DNA from: Vitrella brassicaformis CCMP3155
Lineage: Eukaryota > Protista > Chromerida
Length of the DNA: 64,000 nt
Reading direction: 5' to 3'
Assembly: GCA_001179505.1 (NCBI GenBank)
Contig: CDMY01000369.1
Coordinates: 1 to 64,000, forward strand
Positions 48,057 through 59,443 of the stretch are shown here, piece by piece. How positions within the stretch are numbered: the first letter of the stretch is position 1; every line of letters starts with the position of its first letter. The translations under genes and the position numbers were made by a program. Under the pieces are notes generated by a model. That model did no database searches and was not told where the DNA came from. It was given only the letters and a program-made list of their open reading frames with translations.

Positions 48057-49610
48057 TTGCATTGCGTGGCAGACAGGACAGACAGACAGACAGACAGATG
48101 GACCGCGACCGGGCGAGGGCCCACTCGTTTCAGTCCACTGCACTGTGTACGTGTAGACAGGCAAGACAGACAGACAGACAGACAGGTTGGTTAGTTGGTT
48201 GACGGGCTATTTGGGCCGTCCTGTGGTCACTTGGTTCTTGCTAGCTGCTGATACTTACACCTACCGTCCGCACGTTCTCCAATCGCGCTCACGTCGCCAT
48301 CCAAGTGCTGCGTCGTCGCCATCTCGCGTCGCTGCGGTGCTTGGATGCGGGTGTTACCGCTCTTGGAGGTGTGCGTGGTGCTTGGACAGCAGAGGCTGGT
48401 TGTCGTGTCTGTCGATCGGTGGCTGTCTGTCTGTTTTCCGTAGTAGGTGCTGTGGCTGGCTATTTTTGTCGTGAAACACTCATGCCATCCTTGGATGATG
48501 TGTATGTGTATATGTATGTGTATTGCTGGCCGACAGGCTGGCTGGCTGGCTGACTACCCATTTGCTCAAAACGCTACTCGCTCTCTCCTTCCCTGCCTCC
48601 CTGCCTCCCTGCCTGCAGAAATACCTGACAGGTATCTAACGAAGGCGCGATAGTCAACAGACATGGACGCTTTTGCCTTTCTCGCTATAGGGATGTTCCC
48701 TCTGGGGTGGTTTTCTGACTCGCCGACAGACGCACAGACAGAGAGACAGACAGACAGACAGACAGGCACTGTTTGAACCAACCATTTGAGTGTACGATCG
48801 CGACCGGATGGATGGATGGGTGGGTGGGTGGGTGACACGCATTAATGAGGGTATTTTTCTTGCCTTCTCTTCTTGTTGTTGTTTGTGTGGCCGTCGAGCT
48901 GCGACGCCTGTTGGCTGTATTGTATAGAAACAAGCAATCGGATCGAATCTGTTTTGCCCATATGTACGTATATACCTACTTGCTCATGCTTTACACACAT
49001 GTACACCCATTATATATTATCCTATCGGTTTTGCTCTGTCTACCTGTCTGTCCGTCTCTCTCTCTCAACACTAACACTGACTGCATGGCGAGAGCCGAGC
49101 GAGTAGTGAGTGATTGAGCGACCATGTCACGTTGTCAATTCATCCTACCATCCTCTCCTCCCACCGCACCCTTCAGTGCATCCATGAGTGTACTATAGGC
49201 CACCAACCATCCATCCATCCAGACAGACAGACAGACAGACCCGACAGAGAGAGAAAGGAGACATACTACACACAAGTACTTGCTTGCTGACCTGCAGCCT
49301 TACTGTCATCCATCCCATCATGTGTGTCGGTTTTGTTTATGGTGCGTGCACTTGGCTGACGAAGGATTGGTCCCATGTTTCCTAACGTGACATGACAGTG
49401 TGGCGTTCGGGCAGGAGTTCCGTTAAACCTCGGCTCGAGGAGTCAGAGAGGAGCGCAGGTTCCTCCGCAACGAAGCAGCTTGAAGGGCCGGTTGCACTCG
49501 ACATCAGCCACCGACGCATCGTCACTCAGTGGATCGTCACTGCTGCGCCAGTGCTTCGTCACTCTCCCAGAATCCGAGCGGATCTGTCACATGCATCAAT
49601 CTTTCCGAGA

Positions 49611-50997
49611 ATGAGCACATCCCGGGCTTTTGTCAGCCTCTTGCTGATCTTGCCGCTGACGGCTCTCGCCTTCCGCTTGCCCCGTCCCATCGCCAAGCGA
49701 TTGTCGCACTCCTCCCGCCCTCCCACAAGACAGCCTCTCGCACAAGAAACGGCCACTCCCACAGCAAACGACGATGTGCAGTCTCTCAAGAAGCCGCCTG
49801 ACATCGGCAGGCACAGTGCTTGGACGTATTCGGAAGGCAGTCATTCCGGCGCGTCTCGTGAGGGCCATCAGCCACTTGGACAAGGACGAGACGTCATATC
49901 AGAATCAGGTGCTGGAAATGTCTCGGGTATTGGACTCCTTCACCTTTTGCGAACTCAGCAACGACTACGACTTCTACGCTGGGTCCATACTCGCGGCCTT
50001 CGTCGGACAGGCGATGTGGAGCAGCGGCTGGGAGGAAGGCTGGACTTGCATGTGAGTGNNNNNNNNNNNNNNNNNNNNNNNNNNNNNNNNNNNNNNNNNN
50101 NNNNNNNNNNNNNNNNNNNNNNNNNNNNNNNNNNNNNNNNNNNNNNNNNNNNNNNNNNNNNNNNNNNNNNNNNNNNNNNNNNNNNNNNNNNNNNNNNNNN
50201 NNNNNNNNNNNNNNNNNNNNNNNNNNNNNNNNNNNNNNNNNNNNNNNNNNNNNNNNNNNNNNNNNNNNNNNNNNNNNNNNNNNNNNNNNNNNNNNNNNNN
50301 NNNNNNNNNNNNNNNNNNNNNNNNNNNNNNNNNNNNNNNNNNNNNNNNNNNNNNNNNNAGTGGGTGGGTGGGTGGGTGGGTGGGAGGATGGGTGGGCGTG
50401 ACACACGGACAGTACCTGCCTGTGCGTGTGTTTGTGTACGAATGTTTGTGTGTGTGTTTCAGACGCACCGAAGAGGAAGGCGTGCAGCAGCAGATTGAAG
50501 CCTTGGGAAAGATCGTTAGCGAGAGACCTCTCAATCGGGTGAGTGCGGGGAGAGAGAGAAACGCACTGACTGGCAATGATGCTTCCTTCATTGGTTGGTG
50601 ATCCGTCCGGTATGTGCGCTCGTGCGTGCGTGTGTGTGTGTGTGTGTGCAGTTGGTCGACCACAAGCTGCGTGTGATGGTTGACGCACACAAGCAGTGCT
50701 GCAAAGACGACCGAACGTTCACCGAATTCTACACAGAAATGGTTCAGGAGCTGTGTTACAAACGTACGAACAAACGAACGGGCTCGATAGATCCACATGT
50801 CGATCTTAAGATGCGCGTCATCTCTCTCTCTCTCTCCCCGTGTGTGTTGGCCTTCCTGGTCGGATGCATCAGCTGAGCACAGGTTGATGACACTCGTGGG
50901 ATCCCCGATCTGTCTCACCATGCCACAAGACGATTTCTGCTGTGCCATGGTCACTGAGCAACACACACACACACGCACACACACACTCTCACACACA

Positions 50998-51028
<31 letters not shown>

Positions 51029-51165
51029 CAGTGCGTGTGTGTGGCGTGCAGGATGTCATCTGTGGGTCGCTCGGTTGGGGGACATGGCGAAAGAAGCTCA
51101 CGGACGAAGAGCGTCAGGCCATCTACAAGGCGGCTGGCGCTTCAGGAGCTGGGGTGGTCGGTTGA
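49611..51165 (+). CDS. Hypothetical protein with a signal peptide plus transit-peptide-like leader (probably plastid-targeted); spans an assembly gap
   Basis: MSTSRAFVSLLLILPLTALA-FRLPRPIAKRLSHSSR, with downstream coding-like exons ending ...AGVVG* at 51165. Confidence 0.55.
50059..50358. other. Assembly gap (300 N)
   Basis: Run of n. Confidence 1.
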
Positions 51166-51577: not shown

Positions 51578-54400
51578 TCAGTGTCGCTTCAGCCGCCTCT
51601 TCTGCGCCGAGTGTCTATGCCCCAGCAGCAGTTGTATCTGAGTCGCCGTCGGGTCGGGCATCATCTCATCGTAATGCGAGTGCTCCTCACTCCCCCGGCT
51701 GCCCCGGCTCTGAGCCACGCTATGCCACTCGTGCATGGCAATGCTCTGCCGACGCCTCTGCTGCGGATAACCCACCCCCACTGTCACAGCACCAGGTGGC
51801 AGCGGCGGTCTCGCGGGCGGCATAACGTAGTGGGGGTGGGGAAAAGGCTGGTGGGGATAAGGGTAAGGGTGGCCACTGGTAGTACTAGGCGGATAGACAT
51901 TATCCGGCCTCCCCCTCCCCCCACCGCCCCCGATGCTGCTCGATGAAGATGGCAGGTTCAGGGGTGGCACCAGAGGCCTGGCCCTCTCTGATGGGCCGAG
52001 GTGAGGGGTCCGCAGGACAACCGGCCGCAGCTGGGGCGACAAATCAGCGTTGTCCAGGATGACCGAGCCCATCTTGCTGATCTCCCCCAGGAGCCGCTTC
52101 CGCCCCTCTGAGAAGGAAGGGGAAGCGGCGGTCGCGCGAATGACCAGAGGGGAGCCGCCGGCCAGGCCCTCTCCTTCCTCTGCCTCTCCGAAGATGGGTG
52201 TGGGCTGCGGGTGGGGGGATGTGGGTGGAGACGAGAAGGAGCTTCTTGCAGCGTCATCAGCAGCAGCGTCGGAATCGGCATCCGGTGGTGGTAGTGATGG
52301 TAATGGTCCTCCTCTAGAGCTTGACGCAAGAGAGCTTCTCCTGCTGCGTGTGGAGTAGTGCATCGAGCTCCTGGGCGTGAAATGCGCGGGAGTCAGGCAC
52401 GACAGGCAGCTGCTCTGCCGCTGCGCATCCCGCGGCCGCAGGCTCTTCGGAGAAAGAACAGCCGAGGGCCGCGCCGAACCCGCCGCACCCATGCTGTCGA
52501 CGTCCTCTCCCCCTGGCTCTTGTTCGTCTCCTTCCCTTTCGGACAAGCTGCCTGTAGATGACCGCCTCCTCTGGTAGCCCATCATCAGATCCGATGCGCG
52601 TCGGTTCTCAAATTGGTGGTCTTTGGCTAAGGGGGATGGGGCGCGGAATGTGGGGAAGGCACTTGCTCGTCGCTGCTGCTCGGCGGTGGGTGTGGGTGGC
52701 GCGCTCACTTCGATTTGGTTTGTCGGCTGCCGGCTGATGACACAGCTGACTGGGAATGTGCGCGTGTTGAGACCGAAGGAGACGTCAGACGCGTCGAGAC
52801 ACTCAACCAAGGCCAGGTGCACCTGACAAAAAAAAGCCGTGTCTCTCTCTCTTTATGACCTGTCTCTCTCGCCTAATCTACCTTGTGCAGACACCATCTG
52901 AAGAAGAGGTCCTCGTGGCCACAGATGTAGAAGACCACCTCGTACCGATAAAAGTACTCCTCAATCTCCATCAGCCACACACCAGCGCACTCCGCCACCT
53001 CCTGCACGGACTCGACAGCCACTCGGCATGATGTGGGGATGCGTCGCAGCTGGGAGAGGGGCGTAGACAGGGCCACACGCAGATCAACCTGAATCCGGCG
53101 CTTCCGGCAGTCGGTGAAGCTCTGGATGCCGCAACGCCACACCTCTGAGTTTGGGACGATGAGCAATTGCCCTGCAGGATGGGGAACAGTGGTCAAGAGG
53201 GATTTTTGCCTCTGTGTCTCTGTGTGTATGTGTGGTGTCCTGTCCAGGGGACCTTCATTGATCAGACGCACACGTGTGCTGCGGATGCCGATGTGCTCCA
53301 CGATGCCGCACTGTGCCTGCGGCCTGCCCCCGCCCGACTCATTGTTGATGTTGATGGCTATCTTATCGCCCACGGCAAACCACCGGTCACCCACCACACT
53401 CAGTGTCGCAAAGATGTCTCCTATCACGTTCTGGCTCGCAATGCCCACTGTCAGGCCTGTGAGACCGAGACCGCCAAGCAAGTACGAGATATTGAAGCCC
53501 TGCGATACACGCCCACTTAGAATGGCAGAAAGCAATGGAGGACATTCATTGTGTTGGTACCGACCAGGCGGACAAGGGCGAACAGGCCAAATAGAAGCCA
53601 CAGGAAGAACCGAAGAAAGACCCCAACAAATTGAAATCCCGGCGACTCCTTCCTGTTGCTTTCAGAGTCTGTGTTGTCCTCCCCCTGTGAAATGCCGGAG
53701 CCCCTCCCCATGCCCGCCTCCTGCAGCTGCTCCATGATCTCATTGGCAGCCCTGCTCAACGGAGACACCAACTGATACCCTGCGGCGTACACAGAAACGT
53801 GGCAAAGGGCCGTGAGGTAGTTGCAGACGTGGCCATATACCTATGAGAATCGACAGCACAGCAGCGAGCTGTGACGCCAGTTGCGGCTCTCGGACGACCA
53901 GCAGCGATGGCAGCAGCAGACACACCACATACTCGAAAACCGACAGCTTTTCCACCCGTTTGGCTGTGGAAGGTCTGCTCACTCCACTCATCCATTTGGC
54001 CTGCAGATACTCTCTCGCCGGCACTGACTTGACATCACCAAGGGCTTCCCCAGCCCGTGACCGGCGCATCATTGTTGTGGACAGGGCGCCCCTGCGCCCC
54101 GAGGAAAAAGAGGGGGGCAGAAGGGCCCACGGAAAAAACACCCCAAACACACGGGCAAAAGCCGCGTCTTGGCTTTTGCCGAGCTGCTGCCCCAACACAC
54201 ACAGCAACCGCCGACATCTGAAGCACCCACACACAATGGGATGGAGCCTTTTGGCGCGGAGTGACTGTTTGCATATGTTTGGTTGCTCACTGTTGCCAGA
54301 GTTTCACGCAGAAGAAGACACTGATGACGTACACGATGAAGTCGATGTGGGAGTGGGAGGCGAGGCTGTTGAGGCCACGGATGAGGTGCTGGAGCGGCAT
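51578..54400 (-). CDS. Small-conductance mechanosensitive channel (MscS family) with a long disordered C-terminal tail
   Basis: LLGGLGLTGLTVGIASQNVIGDIFATL, FAVGDKI, GIVEHIGIRSTRVR and LLIVPNSEV, with upstream TM exons. The start is approximate. Confidence 0.9.
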
Positions 54401-54594
54401 CTTCTAGCCTAAGCAGGTGAGTCACGAGCGATTCGGCGTATGCCGACACGGTGATCTGAAGATTCTGAGTGAATCCACAGCAGCTGCATCGATGCTTGCG
54501 CGAAGGGGTTCGCTGAACTCGGCTTACGAGTACAGACTGGGGGCCATCAAGATGGGGGCTGGCCGATCCGATCTGCCAACGATCTTCGTTACCG

Positions 54595-57500
54595 ATGGAG
54601 GAGCTTGTCAAAAACATTCAGCGCGGCCAACGGCTCCAGAGTGTGGGCAACCATCTGATTTTCGTTGCGGGGGACAAGATCGGCCCGGAAGAGAAGGAAG
54701 AACTGAAGCGACATCTCAAGACCCAGCTCACAGACATCGTCAGCACTCCAGCGGCCCATGCTGTCCTACTGTCGGGTCCAGAGGGGAGCGGAAAGTCGTA
54801 TCTGAGCCGTACCGTCGCACAGATACTCGCCGGCGATGATTTTGCCGCGAAGGATGCCGGGGGCTCGTCTTCTTCATTCAGTCAGCGCATTTCAGCCTGC
54901 CTCTACATACTCGGTGAGGTGAAAAAGGCATATTCTTCACGGCATGCAACGGCATCTGTGTTATGCAGATTTTCTTGGATCCACGTGTCATTCGACGCCT
55001 AGTGGCGACTGTTTTTATCGGTCATCGTTCGGCCATCTCTGTCGCTTCTATGTTGACGCGGCGGGCAAAGTCACTGGAGCAGACCTTCGGACGTACCTGC
55101 TGCACGTCCCACGCGACTTCAACCTTCGAGTATTCCATGCGCTGCTCCACACTACAAGACATACACCAGCCGACAACCCGCTGAGGATGCGTGACAACTC
55201 ACATTACAGGCTTCCCGACGAGCCGTCCAGTTCAGAAGAGAAAGAGACGTCATGGGCCCTCTTCGAGCAGAGTCTTACCGTCCTGGGCTTCTCGTCAACG
55301 ATTCGGGCGGCACTTCTCTCCATTCTGTCGGCCATCTTTCTTCTCGGCTGTTCCCATCGTGTTGACGGCAGCGTTATGGATGATGTCCTGCATCTGCTGG
55401 GCATGGCAGTGGCAGAGGGGAGAGATCTCTTTGTAAGACTGTACGGCGAAGACGCTGATGGCAACCTGGGCGGCTTCAAGCATCCTTTCGACTTCCATTC
55501 GCCAGCCACGATTGCTCGCCATCTTTATCGGCGGCTCTTCCAATGGGTGACGAGCCAGACGAATTACGTGCTCAAGGATACGACGCCGCCACATGTCGGC
55601 ACATTGCTGGTAGTGGTGCCGCCCGGTTGGGAAGAGGGAGGGGAAGATGGGAAAGAAGCGGAACATGAAGACTTCTGCGAGTTCCGAAGGCTGATGGTCT
55701 TTTGTCTGTGGGAGAGACTGCTCCATTACTCTAGGCGACTCGTCCTGGGCCCGCCGCCATGCGTCTTTCAGGTGCGTTACAATGTAAGTGAATGGAAGGC
55801 CTGGCAGTCTATTCTGCGTCTCTCTGGACCCGTGCATTCAGCGTGGGCTTTTATCCTATTCGGGAACCCTCTTACAACTCTTCTCCAGTCCGCATGGTCT
55901 CCTCCCCTCTCTGCATCACTTTGCGTCCGAGGCTTTGCTACAAAGCCTGGACGCGCAGCTCAGGCCCTCACAACCCATGGCTCTCTCCGCATCCTCGCTC
56001 ATCACCGAGATAGCCGCTGGCATCAAGGACGGCCAGCGGACACTTCGGGCAGACGGGCCCACAATTGAGTGGCCGCGGACAACGAAGGCCTCGGACGCTT
56101 CGTTCGTTGTGCCGCATTCCAGGTATCAGTTCAAGAATGGGTCGTATCACTACCAGCTCAAGAAGCTTGTGGCGCCGATCAATGAGGGCGTCCCTTTGTG
56201 TGTCGCCGCCCTGTTGTCTTCGTCCTCGAATCCTGTGATACAACAGCTGTTTGCCCCGCGAAAAAGAGCCCCGTCGTCCCCGTTTCATCACGTCTCCCAC
56301 ATTACCGGCCGTGAGCGAGTCAGAGGTGAGCCCAGCTCCCTGCTGGCTCTCATGGAGAGCCAGATGTCTCACATCATCGGCCAGCTGCAGCTCTCTGGAC
56401 CGTCCCTGTCCCTCATCTTCTGTCTCCCACCACAAGGAGATGCGGGAGGAGACATCATCTCGATGTGCGAGAAGCTAGGCATTCCGGCCATCGTACAGCA
56501 CCAGCAGACCGACCTGCCCATCCCTTGTCGAGCGAGACACTTCCATCACATGTATGCCTTCCTATTTGATAACGAAGCTATCAACTCCCTCCCACCATCA
56601 ATGCGGCTCCTGACCGACACGGGTCCAGGGGATGGCAGTGTCGATCGCCTGCTCGAGCTGGGATATCGTCGACGGCTGTTGCCAAGGGACATTGATACCG
56701 CCCTGGGCGTTGTTGTGAGTGACCCACGTGGGCATGTAGTGTGCGTCAGCGCCGAGAAGGGAGACGAGCCTATTCCTTTTATGTCGTGGGTGAGAAAACA
56801 CAAAAGGCTGCTTGGTCTCTCTTTCCATGTCATTTCTTTGCAGGCCCTCCGATCGCATCTTGGACGGCTGCGGTCATATTTGACCGAGCATGAAGTGCCG
56901 ATCCATAGGGTAGCAGAGCCGCTCGCGCAGGAGCACGCCACCTACAGCTCATCTCTCGGCATAGGCACACTCGAGAAGCGGAAAGACGGCCACAAGCACA
57001 CTTTGTCACTCGCTGGCGAGGGGCCACCCGCATCGTCCAATCTGACATCTGGTGAGAAGATGGTCAAGAGAAGCATCCATTGACGTCGCTCATGTCTTTC
57101 AGTCGGCAGCAGCAACGAGGCTCTGGGGAGAGGAGTGCGGCTGCACATGACAGTGAGACGAGGGACAACCGACTCCACAATCGACATGCTGATCAGTCAA
57201 AGCACACTGAGAGGCGTCAGCAGGTCACGGCTCCACGTGCAGGTGAGCGAGTTTGTTGAGTAGCTCTGTTGCTGCATCGGTCTATCCCTTTGTCTGCAGG
57301 AAATACCAGCACCCTCCGAAGCGCCCTACATGCAGCTCTGTCTCGACGTCCATCCACCCAGTAAGATCGACAGAGACAACGCGCCGCTTCTCTGCCCGTC
57401 CAGCGTCGAGATAGCCCTGGAGTTTCGACGACTGATCAACACACACCTTGCTGATTGTCACCTCAATGACATGGGTACGGTAGGGGGACACAGAAAGAGA

Positions 57501-58297
57501 GACATTCCGACCGACCGAATGTGTCCCTTCTTCATTTTTTCTCCAACAGAGATTTTGCGGGGCGAGCAACCCCAACATCTCCAATGGCCTTCAGGAGAAG
57601 GTCTTTTAAGCCAACAGACGTTTCATGATCGAATCGCACAACTACGAAACAAGCTGGTCGACAACACAAGCCCACCACGCCTTGACCGGCAGGAAGAAAC
57701 AATAGATTGCACTAGAGGAGCTTTCGAGAAAGAGCCTGCATTTTCTCGACGCTGCACATTCTCAAGGGAAGAGAGGAGCGAACAAGATTACAGGCCGACC
57801 GACAAGGTGAGAGAAATAGATTATTCCTCGCTGGAACCCGTGTCTATGTGGATTTCTGCCCATCTGTTGGTTAGATATCCTCAGAGGAGCTGCAGAGAAT
57901 CAGGTGCCATCTCTCTTCCCTGAGAGAGGCTCAGAGAAGCCTGGACGATCGCACGACCAATCTGGAGAAAGATATTCTGAGGAGAGGCGACATGGATGAT
58001 ACCACTCGGCAGAGGACCTACAACACACCAGTCTCCCCGTACGACGAGCCCATCGCACACCAATCCCCCGCCCCGACCTTCTCTCCTTCCACCGTAGCGA
58101 CTGACCCATCGACGACTCTTGTGTCGGTGAATCTTGGCAAGACAAGGGAGAGGACACCTGGTCCTGGCCGCCATTCCAGTCACGACAGGCAGAAAAGCAA
58201 AGATAGTCGTGCAAGGGAAGGACAGGCCGGGCAGGCCCGCAACGTGCTGGTAGAAGTAGTGAGGAACTGTAGCTGGGACTCCCGGCGGGGAGAATAG
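54595..58297 (+). CDS. Highly divergent myosin motor-like protein (probable pseudo-myosin); extent beyond 57083 uncertain
   Basis: Ordered myosin landmarks: LLSGPEGSGKS (P-loop), IL|DFLGS, RSSFG, GADLRTYLL, ARHLYRRLFQWVTSQTNYVL, LLSSSSNPVIQQLF, IFCLPP and LGIPAIV...FHHMYAFL. Confidence 0.78.
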
Positions 58298-58437: not shown

Positions 58438-59443
58438 ATGGGACCTAAAAAGGCTGCCAAGAAGGGCGGTGGAGGAGATGAGGACCGGGATTACGACCAA
58501 GAGAACGCCGTGCTGATGTCCAGGGTAGAAACACTCCACCACAAACTGAGTAAGGAATAAAAAGAGCCTCACCGTCACGGAGGCATCGACCTCTTTGCAC
58601 CTGTCTGCCGGTTCGACAGTGATGAAGAACGAGCACATTGCCAAGAGCCGCACAGCGTGTGAGGACTTGAGGAGGCGGCTGAGCCAGCTGGACCACCACT
58701 TTTCTGAAGAGGCCAGCCAGGGGGACAAGGCTACCGGCGAGATGAGACGGCAGTACACAGAGATGGAGACCAACTTCCTCAAGATCATGGACAACCTACA
58801 GAAGCAGGTGGCAGACTCAAAAGACGACATCGGTGAGTCGATTGCGGTGGACACACACTGCAGGCTGAGCTTGGTATGTTCTTCTGTCTCCTATCTGTCT
58901 GTGTGTGGGCCTCCAGAGAATGTTCAGCGCACGATAGAGACGACCCAAGTTGAAAAGGACGAGGTGATTGCAGCCAAAGACGCGGAGATTCGCCGGCTCC
59001 AGATGCAGATGGAGACCATGGCCATCGAGTTTGCTGATATGCTCAAGGTACATGCGTGGATGTGCTCAACCGATTTCCCCTGTCTCGCTCACCGACGGTG
59101 GTTTTCGTGTGCAGGAAACGCTCGACAAGATGAGTCAGCGTGTGGAGGTCACACACATAGGCTGGGACAGAGACGGGGGTGCAGGCCGTCCGCCGCTTAT
59201 GAATCGTCTCAAGGAGTTTGCACTGCTTTCAACTCCACCAGGTACATGGCTGGCCGCACCCATGACAGGCCACCCTGTGTGCCATGCGTGTTTGGTGTTG
59301 TTTGCTGGCCAGATCGTTCTGTGCCTGTGAGTGCCGTTCCCCAGCGGATTCAGATTAATCCACCTGCTGGTGCTGCTGAAGAGGCTCAGGCCATCGCCGA
59401 TGGCGAGGCTCATGAAGACAAGGAGCACTCTGCGGTTGAATGA
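58438..59443 (+). CDS. CCDC153/DRC12-like flagellar coiled-coil protein
   Basis: MGPKKAAKK start, coiled coil, and KDAEIRRLQMQMETMAIEFADMLK|ETLDKMSQRVE, which resembles the CCDC153 family C-terminus. Confidence 0.65.

What the first reader, a model, noticed from the sequence alone, without database searches (positions are those of the whole stretch)
54595..57083. Probable pseudo-myosin: whole motor scaffold kept, switch I and switch II destroyed
Seen: myosin landmarks occur in the correct order, but the catalytic motifs are degenerate. P-loop GESGAGKT becomes GPEGSGKS, LEAFGN becomes LDFLGS, switch I NxNSSRFG becomes FYRSSFG, switch II LDIFGFE becomes LVVVPPGWE, HYAG becomes HSRY, FIRCIKPN becomes LIFCLPP, and the SH1 helix region is LGIPAIV. 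The N-terminal SH3-like region is absent and no IQ motif was seen. Established: the switch I Arg / switch II Glu salt bridge is needed for ATP hydrolysis, and motor-dead myosin-like domains exist (class XVIII, chitin synthase MMD). Inference: this is a non-motor actin or nucleotide-binding scaffold of an unclassified class in a relative of apicomplexans, whose glideosome depends on unusual myosins.
Basis: partly seen in the sequence, partly recalled or inferred. Interest (0 to 1): 0.7.

Follow-up and report, generated by a model that had tools for sequence, protein, structure and literature searches.

The report
Orphan degenerate myosin-like gene, Vitrella
This is an expressed, correctly spliced gene of the alga Vitrella brassicaformis that encodes a complete but extremely diverged myosin motor domain with key ATP-splitting and force-relaying residues replaced, so it is probably a motor turned into a passive binding protein; it is curious, but proteins of this kind are already known.

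Summary

- **Gene model:** the gene is larger than reported. It has 8 exons (54595-58297, + strand) and encodes 1090 aa. The stop at 57083 lies inside an intron. A spliced RNA contig shows six GT..AG introns.
- **Public record:** the gene prediction (P0001, Vitrella brassicaformis CCMP3155, UniRef "Myosin motor domain-containing protein") equals my model.
- **Homology:** it was tested against 45 natural myosin motors fetched here. hhalign gives probability 99.1%, E 7.8e-19, collinear over residues 44-620. The C-terminal half alone scores 8.2 bits, and none of 2000 shuffles reaches that.
- **Degeneracy:** P0001 keeps 16 of 39 columns that are invariant in the real myosins.
  - The Walker A pattern survives (GPEGSGKS).
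  - The switch I Arg is Ser126.
  - The switch II Asp is Leu320, with PP inserted before a retained Gly and Glu.
  - Ten residues are inserted after switch II.
  - GPPP sits in the relay helix.
- **Divergence:** its tree branch is 9.9 changes per site, against a median of 0.61.
- **Relatives:** none were found among 1.84 billion representatives or by the word search.
- **Coding status:** the frame has no stop, while the other frames have 24-38.

Best reading: a lineage-specific pseudo-myosin that may work like class-18 myosins, though this is untested, and is not a member of that class. No link to the glideosome is supported. The scan had not noted this gene before.

The parts
54552..54594 (+). 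5' untranslated stretch covered by the spliced RNA contig
   Evidence: In one search, record 4 of run X4 starts at 54552. The first ATG in frame is at 54595.
54595..54913 (+). Exon 1 (aa 1-107). It holds the start of the motor and the P-loop GPEGSGKS (54775-54798).
   Evidence: The Pfam Myosin_head stretch starts at aa 53. Weak AAA-type hits cover only the Walker A region.
54914..54968 (+). Intron 1, 55 nt, GT..AG
   Evidence: Splice joint in the RNA contig; ends checked.
54969..55771 (+). Exon 2 (aa 107-374). It holds switch I YRSSFGH (55016-55036), the upper 50K part, switch II LLVVVPPGWE (55604-55633), the 10-residue insertion after switch II (about 55634-55669), and the relay-helix region with GPPP (55748-55759).
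   Evidence: Pfam Myosin_head E 2.2e-6 for this exon alone. PDB phmmer hit to non-muscle myosin 2C, E 1.7e-7. Column-by-column alignment.
55772..55841 (+). Intron 2, 70 nt, GT..AG
55842..56789 (+). Exon 3 (aa 375-690). It holds the lower 50K part, HSRY (56115-56126), the basic loop 2 (56253-56339), LIFCLPP (56412-56432), the SH1-like LGIPAIV (56475-56495) and a converter-like region.
   Evidence: Pfam and PDB give no hit for this part alone. A targeted HMM gives 8.2 bits, E 3.4e-5, and 0 of 2000 shuffles reach it. hhalign E 3e-4, collinear over aa 447-621.
56790..56843 (+). Intron 3, 54 nt, in frame and without a stop.
56844..57051 (+). Exon 4 (aa 691-760). A helix following the converter, with no IQ motif.
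   Evidence: No Pfam family. No IQ by regex.
57052..57102 (+). Intron 4, 51 nt.
57103..57242 (+). Exon 5 (tail)
57243..57299 (+). Intron 5, 57 nt
57300..57474 (+). Exon 6 (tail)
57475..57549 (+). Intron 6, 75 nt
57550..57806 (+). Exon 7 (tail)
57807..57874 (+). Intron 7, 68 nt, GTGAGA..TTAG. It is inferred; the reads laid stopped at 57800.
   Evidence: It has the best donor consensus and keeps the frame open. The public protein P0001 has the same junction.
57875..58297 (+). Exon 8 (aa 951-1090 plus the stop). It holds a possible short coiled coil (57875-57994) followed by an S/T/P/R-rich end.
   Evidence: No Pfam family.

Best explanation
**What it is.** A single-copy, lineage-restricted gene of Vitrella brassicaformis (8 exons, 54595-58297, + strand) is transcribed, spliced and kept open. 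It encodes a 1090-aa protein.

**Architecture.** Residues 1 to about 700 are a complete myosin motor domain that has diverged beyond every sampled myosin. It has no N-terminal extension and no IQ neck. A tail of about 390 aa follows, mostly low in complexity, with one short possible coiled coil.

**Shown here.**
- Homology runs from the P-loop to the converter.
- The Walker A pattern survives.
- Switch I has lost its Arg (Ser126) and its first Asn and Ser.
- Switch II has lost its Asp (Leu320) and carries PP just before the retained Gly and Glu.
- Ten residues are inserted right after switch II.
- The distal relay helix holds GPPP.

**Inferred.**
- The domain cannot run the ATPase-driven power stroke.
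- It works as a static module, most likely an ATP-insensitive actin tether or scaffold, as the class-18 myosins do. Its loop 2 is still basic and the scaffold of the actin-side lower 50K part is kept.
- Partners or placement would be supplied by the tail.
For: **Gene model and expression.** A spliced contig of run X4 has six GT..AG joints, while two DNA runs carry the unspliced form. The joined frame is open. It is identical to public protein P0001.

**Coding constraint.**
- The frame has 0 stops, against 24-38 in the five other frames.
- Base composition alone gives P about 1.6e-17 for no stop.
- GC1/2/3 are 0.61/0.47/0.63, like the other long ORFs in the window; the introns are at 0.48.

**Homology.**
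- Pfam Myosin_head: E 3.3e-8, 32.7 bits.
- PDB myosins: E 7.9e-9 over aa 55-315.
- hhalign against 45 motors: probability 99.1%, E 7.8e-19, aa 44-620.
- C-terminal half: 8.2 bits, with 0 of 2000 shuffles reaching it.
- Language-model neighbours are all Myosin_head clusters: score 0.91, 183 of 256 shared features.

**Degeneracy.**
- It keeps 16 of 39 invariant columns and 25 of 60 columns conserved at 95% or more. Real myosins keep at least 87%.
- The motif columns are shown.
- Identity to the motors is 15-20%, below the lowest myosin-myosin value of 21.6%.
- Its terminal branch is 9.91, against a median of 0.61.

**Analogy.** Drosophila myosin-18 has a near-consensus P-loop, a Pro before the switch II Gly, a 6-residue insertion after switch II and a broken salt bridge. 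It has no ATPase activity and no ATP binding, but it binds actin (PMC3122231).
Against: - There is no biochemical evidence and no evidence at the protein level.
- No relative exists, so neither conservation nor dN/dS can be shown. The two DNA runs are identical over the stretch, so they give no polymorphism data either.
- Pfam scores 0.6 bits under its gathering cut-off.
- AlphaFold without an alignment failed (pLDDT 36).
- The good model (pLDDT 73.8, TM about 0.6-0.65 to myosins) was made with an alignment of myosins, so it is circular as a test of fold.
- Walker A, the switch I Mg-binding Ser125, the switch II Gly326 and Glu328 are all kept, and Arg124 lies two residues before the lost Arg. 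A rearranged but working site is therefore not excluded.
- The 45 reference motors were chosen by an exact GESGAGKTE pattern, so the P-loop columns are invariant by construction. Without them, P0001 keeps 12 of 30.
Confidence: 0.7

Rival explanations
1. It is still a working motor, or at least an ATPase, with an unorthodox active site. It would be a fast-evolving real myosin in which other residues, such as Arg124 paired with Glu328, replace the lost ones.
For: - The Walker A Lys67 and Ser68, Ser125, Gly326 and Glu328 are retained.
- The whole scaffold through the converter is retained.
- The gene is expressed and its frame is intact.
Against: - The switch II Asp is replaced by Leu, and residues are inserted within and just after switch II.
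- Three prolines lie in the relay helix.
- The invariant Asn and Ser of switch I are lost.
- Only 41% of invariant columns are kept.
- Milder changes of the same sort go with total loss of ATPase activity in Drosophila myosin-18 (PMC3122231).
- There is no IQ or light-chain site to stiffen a lever.
Confidence: 0.12
2. It is a dying or functionless gene: a duplicated myosin that has lost its constraint and is still transcribed.
For: - It is an orphan with no detectable relative.
- It has an extreme branch length.
- Its catalytic motifs are degenerate.
- No test of selection was possible.
Against: - A sequence this far from all myosins, at about 10 changes per site, could not keep 1090 codons free of stops and frameshifts without selection. 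The coding frame has 0 stops against 24-38 in the other frames.
- All six introns that the RNA contig covers are spliced at GT..AG sites.
- Codon-position GC resembles the neighbouring ORFs.
- Hydrophobic-core and structural glycine columns are kept while catalytic ones are lost.
Confidence: 0.1
3. It is not myosin-derived. It would be an AAA-like or other P-loop NTPase with chance myosin-like strings.
For: On its own, exon 1 hits AAA_16, Mg_chelatase, AAA_5 and AAA+ chains of the PDB weakly, around the Walker A region.
Against: - Those hits cover only about aa 39-85 and all fall under the curated cut-offs.
- The same residues sit inside a single collinear alignment to myosin motors spanning 515 aligned columns at E 7.8e-19.
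- PDB hits with the whole protein are all myosins.
Confidence: 0.01

Closest known systems
Class-18 myosins (Drosophila myosin-18, mammalian Myo18A/B)
   Same: - The motor domain is kept as a scaffold while the enzymatic cycle is lost.
- The P-loop is near consensus.
- There is a proline immediately before the switch II glycine.
- Extra residues are buried just after switch II.
- The switch I/switch II salt bridge is broken.
- It is proposed to act as an actin tether (PMC3122231; review PMC7900500).
   Different: - In class 18 the salt bridge is broken on the Glu side (Glu to Gln). Here it is broken on the Arg side (Arg to Ser126), and the switch II Asp is lost as well.
- This protein has no PDZ or KE-rich N-terminus and no long coiled-coil rod.
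- Class 18 arose in the holozoan ancestor (PMC5583752), whereas this is an alveolate orphan.
- This protein is far more diverged: it keeps 41% of invariant columns.
Orphan and extremely divergent myosins of the Kollmar and Muehlhausen 2017 catalogue (PMC5583752)
   Same: It is a species-restricted myosin that cannot be classed by motor phylogeny. That paper lists 287 such orphans and set aside some as 'extremely divergent'.
   Different: The main text of that paper mentions Vitrella only for class-26 myosins, as 'data not shown'. I could not tell whether this gene is in its database. The paper makes no statement about dead active sites.
Myosin motor-like domain of fungal chitin synthases (class 17, including the divergent 17B)
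   Same: A myosin head reused as a non-canonical module, with divergent motifs in some members. PMC5583752 removed the divergent ascomycete class 17B from its trees.
   Different: This protein has no chitin synthase domain, nor any other Pfam domain. The taxon is different.
Conventional and unconventional myosin motors (PF00063)
   Same: The order of all motor landmarks is the same, from the P-loop to the SH1 helix and converter.
   Different: - Identity is 15-20%.
- The Pfam score is just under the cut-off.
- The switch I, switch II and relay consensus sequences are not met.
- There is no IQ neck.

Membership tests
Myosin superfamily (Pfam PF00063 Myosin_head) | Score at or above Pfam's gathering cut-off | tested here: inconclusive
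   PF00063.27 gives 32.7 bits against a cut-off of 33.3, E 3.3e-8. The collection's precomputed table lists PF00063.28 for this protein, and UniRef names it 'Myosin motor domain-containing protein'.
Myosin superfamily | Collinear homology over the whole motor, from the P-loop to the SH1 helix and converter | tested here: met
   hhalign probability 99.1%, E 7.8e-19, aa 44-620 against profile 90-651. The C-terminal half alone is significant against 2000 shuffles.
Myosin superfamily | P-loop GESGAGKT | tested here: not met
   The sequence is GPEGSGKS. The general Walker A pattern GxxxxGK[ST] is kept, but 4 of the 8 myosin-specific residues differ.
Myosin superfamily | Switch I NxNSSRFGK, with the Arg that bridges to switch II | tested here: not met
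   YRSSFGH aligns to NSSRFGK. Asn becomes Tyr123, Ser becomes Arg124, Ser125 is kept, and Arg becomes Ser126.
Myosin superfamily | Switch II DIxGFE | tested here: not met
   The sequence is LLVVVPPGWE. Asp becomes Leu320, three residues are inserted, and Gly326 and Glu328 are kept.
Myosin superfamily | Actin-activated ATPase and actin binding | not testable with these tools
   This needs purified protein.
Myosin superfamily | Neck with IQ motifs (most classes have one) | tested here: not met
   Pfam gives no IQ hit at E up to 10, and neither a strict nor a loose IQ regex matches. The viral and metagenomic myosins used as controls do give IQ hits.
Class-18 myosins | N-terminal KE-rich or PDZ extension, a coiled-coil rod, and grouping with holozoan class 18 | tested here: not met
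   No PDZ or other domain is found, and the protein starts at the motor. The branch is too long to group with anything. No labelled class-18 sequences were in the tree.
Chitin synthase with a myosin motor-like domain (class 17) | A chitin synthase domain C-terminal to the motor | tested here: not met
   No Pfam family is found in aa 375-1090.
Alveolate myosin classes (XIV, XXII and others) | Supported grouping of the motor with members of a class | tested here: inconclusive
   Only unlabelled metagenomic and viral motors were to hand. P0001 sits alone on a branch of 9.91 changes per site. No relative was found in searches of 1.84 and 5.8 billion proteins.
AAA+ ATPases | An AAA module beyond Walker A (Walker B, sensor residues, lid) | tested here: not met
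   Only aa 39-85 match, and they fall under all the cut-offs. The rest aligns to myosin.

The most novel reading that the evidence does not exclude
The intact Walker A loop still binds nucleotide, and the protein is a nucleotide-gated switch or tether that does not depend on hydrolysis. It may have been retargeted to a partner other than actin. It would be the first known member of a chromerid-lineage class of pseudo-myosins whose relatives are simply not yet sequenced.
Probability: 0.12. Interest if true: 0.55.

Novelty: new member of a known kind. Interest (0 to 1): 0.36.

Why it matters
Motor proteins that have given up their motor cycle are rare and little studied compared with pseudokinases. 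For myosins, the well-studied example found in this work's literature searches is animal class 18.

An independent case in a free-living relative of apicomplexans shows partly the same lesions: a proline before the switch II glycine, an insertion after switch II and a broken salt bridge. That would suggest a repeatable route from motor to tether.

The protein would also be a natural test of which motor elements are needed only for the scaffold. Its reach is limited, because it is a single gene in a single species, has no relatives and has no functional data.

Tried and rejected
- **Word search with the longest stop-free piece** (431 aa): blank. This is expected, because the length filter shuts out a 1090-aa protein.
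- **Atlas look-up of exon 3 alone**: only unnamed bacterial clusters at chance-level scores, so it was dropped.
- **PDB and Pfam searches of the C-terminal half**: blank. This was overcome by fetching real myosins and running a targeted, unfiltered HMM search with shuffle controls.
- **AlphaFold on the single sequence**: pLDDT 36, unusable.
- **AlphaFold with the myosin alignment and Foldseek**: gives a myosin fold, but I count it only as consistent, not as a test, because the alignment dictates the fold.
- **Tree to find a parent class**: the long branch makes placement meaningless. The careful tree search did not finish in time, so a quick tree is reported.
- **Run X6** (a possible RNA run from a third study): no coverage.
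- **AAA+ reading of exon 1:** rejected.
- **dN/dS and polymorphism:** not possible. There is no relative, and the two DNA runs are identical over the stretch.
- **Handling of the joined model:** exons were searched one by one by reference. The joined model was built only inside scripts to check the frame. It was never typed or sent to a search. Once the representative search returned public protein P0001, identical to the model, that id was used instead.
- **Contig origin:** none of the fetched contigs was taken for human. Some class-II-like metagenome contigs may be of animal origin; this was not examined.
Full report
**What is at the coordinates.** The stretch 54595-57083 holds three overlapping open frames on the + strand. 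Laying public runs on 54300-57800 showed one contig of run X4 that skips six short GT..AG stretches. Two DNA runs (X1 and X2, from two studies) carry the unspliced sequence without a single difference. The skipped stretches are:

- 54914-54968
- 55772-55841
- 56790-56843
- 57052-57102
- 57243-57299
- 57475-57549

X4 is therefore most simply an RNA library, and the gene is transcribed and spliced. One more intron (57807-57874) is inferred from the best donor site and from frame continuity.

The resulting model has 8 exons (54595-58297) and encodes 1090 aa. An exhaustive HMMER search with exon 2 returned a single protein, P0001. It is 1090 aa long and letter for letter the same as the model. Its sources name it "unnamed protein product [Vitrella brassicaformis CCMP3155]" and, in UniRef, "Myosin motor domain-containing protein". 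So the organism is indeed a photosynthetic relative of apicomplexans, and automatic annotation already flags a myosin domain.

**How the joined model was handled.** Exons were searched one at a time by reference. The joined model was made only inside scripts to check the frame and was sent to no search. From then on, the public id P0001 was used.

**Is it really myosin-like over its whole length?**

- With standard libraries only the first half is detectable.
  - Pfam Myosin_head scores E 3.3e-8 at 32.7 bits, which is 0.6 bits under the curated cut-off. It covers aa 53-233.
  - PDB myosins score down to E 7.9e-9 over aa 55-315.
  - The second half gave nothing in Pfam or PDB.
  - I scanned virus and metagenome contigs for a back-translated GESGAGKTE pattern.
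  - This gave 47 uninterrupted myosin frames of 650 aa or more; 45 had enough sequence after the P-loop and were used as motors.
  - Five of these were confirmed by Pfam at E 1e-103 to 1e-121.
- An HMM built from these motors was run without speed filters on P0001 alone.
  - It scores the N-terminal half at 44 bits.
  - It scores the C-terminal half (aa 316-760) at 8.2 bits, E 3.4e-5, aligned collinearly (aa 447-619 to model positions 474-637).
  - None of 2000 shuffles of that half exceeded -1.1 bits.
- hhalign against the same motors:
  - For aa 1-760 it gives a single alignment of 515 columns, aa 44-620, probability 99.1%, E 7.8e-19.
  - For the C-terminal half alone it gives E 3e-4 over the same columns.
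- Language-model neighbours are all Myosin_head clusters.
- AlphaFold without an alignment failed (pLDDT 36).
- AlphaFold with the myosin alignment gave pLDDT 73.8 and Foldseek TM scores of 0.6-0.65 to myosin heads. That alignment dictates the fold, so I count this as consistent only.

**How degenerate is it?** The column-by-column alignment gives the following.

| Element | Myosin consensus | P0001 | Note |
|---|---|---|---|
| P-loop | GESGAGKT | GPEGSGKS | Walker A Gly, Lys and Ser/Thr kept |
| Conserved LEAFGN motif | LEAFGN | LDFLGS | |
| Switch I | NSSRFGK | YRSSFGH | The Mg-binding Ser125 is kept; the salt-bridge Arg is Ser126 |
| Switch II | LDIF-GFE | LLVVVPPGWE | Asp is Leu320; three extra residues, two of them Pro, before the retained Gly326 and Glu328 |
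| After switch II | (none) | ten extra residues | Insertion |
| Distal relay helix | EQEEY | GPPP (aa 367-370) | |
| HYAG motif | HYAG | HSRY, plus a 5-residue insertion | |
| Conserved FIRCIKPN motif | FIRCIKPN | LIFCLPPQ | |
| SH1/converter start | G...GFP.R.....F..RY..L | G...DLPIP.....F..MY..L | Spacing is the same |

Further measures:

- Of 39 columns invariant in the 45 myosins, P0001 keeps 16. Of 60 columns conserved at 95% or more, it keeps 25. Every real myosin keeps at least 87%.
- The nine P-loop columns are invariant by the way the set was chosen. Without them the figure is 12 of 30.
- Identity to any motor is 15-20%, below the lowest value between two real myosins (21.6%).
- In a quick maximum-likelihood tree its terminal branch is 9.91 changes per column. 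The median is 0.61 and the next longest is 2.66. No class can be assigned.

**Gene or wreck?**

- The reading frame has no stop in 1090 codons, while the five other frames of the same DNA have 24-38. Base composition alone predicts about 39 stops (P of none about 1.6e-17).
- Codon-position GC (0.61/0.47/0.63) matches other long ORFs in the window. The introns are at 0.48.
- All six introns that the RNA contig covers are removed in it.
- A sequence that has drifted this far could not have stayed open without selection. I therefore take it as a functional protein. A very recent loss of constraint cannot be excluded.

**Relatives.**

- Exon 2 searched against 1.84 billion representatives found only P0001 itself.
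- The word search with aa 1-700 against 5.8 billion clusters at E up to 10 also found only P0001 itself: one member on one contig.
- Anything above roughly 25-30% identity should have been seen, so this is an orphan as far as public data go.
- Consequently no conservation test, dN/dS or parent class is available.

**Mechanism.**

- Established knowledge (named sources):
  - The switch I Arg and the switch II Glu form a salt bridge (R238:E459 in Dictyostelium numbering; PMC7986744).
  - Breaking that bridge sharply lowers hydrolysis without preventing nucleotide binding (as summarised in PMC3122231).
- From my own knowledge: the switch II Asp helps hold Mg, and the relay helix carries switch II movements to the converter.
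- Here the Arg and the Asp are gone, switch II is lengthened and stiffened by prolines, and the relay helix is broken by three prolines.
- Drosophila myosin-18 has milder lesions of the same type: P-loop GRSGAGKS, a Pro before the switch II Gly, a 6-residue insertion after switch II, and Glu changed to Gln. It neither hydrolyses nor binds ATP, but it binds actin in an ATP-insensitive way (PMC3122231).
- By analogy I infer a non-motor module, most likely an actin tether or scaffold.
- Loop 2 is still basic, with 6 Lys/Arg against 2 Asp/Glu in aa 512-540. This is in keeping with actin binding but does not show it.
- The tail (aa 728-1090) is rich in Arg, Ser, Thr and Pro, has no Pfam family, and has one short heptad-like stretch at aa 951-990.

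**Comparison and novelty.**

- The protein may work like class-18 myosins, though this is untested, but it fails their defining features: no PDZ or KE-rich N-terminus, no coiled-coil rod, and a different taxon.
- It is not a chitin-synthase fusion.
- It fits the category of orphan, extremely divergent myosins that the largest myosin survey records. That survey lists 287 orphans, and its main text mentions Vitrella only in passing (PMC5583752).
- The chromerid genome paper only counts myosin families (PMC4501334).
- I found no description of this gene as a degenerate motor.
- My verdict is a new member of a known kind. It is of moderate interest, and limited by being a single-species orphan without functional data.
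- The hinted connection to the apicomplexan glideosome has no support.
- The scan's earlier notes on this genome mention a different myosin, not this gene.

Noticed in passing
window 58439-59440 (+): The next gene downstream starts at the ATG at 58439. It is rich in coiled coil and has a weak NYD-SP28 'sperm tail' hit, the family of dynein regulatory complex proteins (E 8.8e-4, under the cut-off). The spliced RNA contig of run X4 extends about 1.5 kb beyond 57800, so it probably runs across both genes, through overlapping UTRs or read-through.
   Followed up: partly
window 52873-53601 (-) and 51578-52822 (-): The upstream neighbour on the opposite strand encodes a mechanosensitive-channel beta-domain (MS_channel_2nd, E 2.9e-8). 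It is followed by a long Ser/Pro-rich frame with no family. A separate RNA contig covers 54300-54558.
   Followed up: partly
window 54914-57874: All seven introns of this gene are 51-75 nt long with GTGAG/GTGCG donors. Four of the seven have lengths that are multiples of three, and one of these, intron 3, also has no stop in frame. Reading the frame by eye or by ORF therefore silently includes intron sequence or stops early.
   Followed up: yes
L004:7657-10374, L007:560-3007, L008:1259-3850, L009:5352-7964, L014:1763-4468: Five virus contigs from IMG/VR, three of them labelled giant-virus MAGs (L004, L008, L014), carry uninterrupted myosin genes of 816-906 codons (Myosin_head E 1e-103 to 1e-121). 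In the quick tree they form two deep viral groups.
   Followed up: partly
L001:8432-9889, L002:3614-5092, L005:2390-3850, L006:2153-3613, L012:1236-2708, L013:3783-5219: Six viral contigs encode proteins of about 480-490 aa with the string GE[CS]GAGKTE at about residue 250, in a conserved context (QAS..GSI.A..GE.GAGKTE). This is a myosin-like P-loop string in what is clearly not a myosin.
   Followed up: no
window 49386-51113: This is a low-GC island (GC about 0.49). It holds two long overlapping frames on opposite strands whose codon-position GC (0.40-0.47) is unlike the other ORFs of the window.
   Followed up: no
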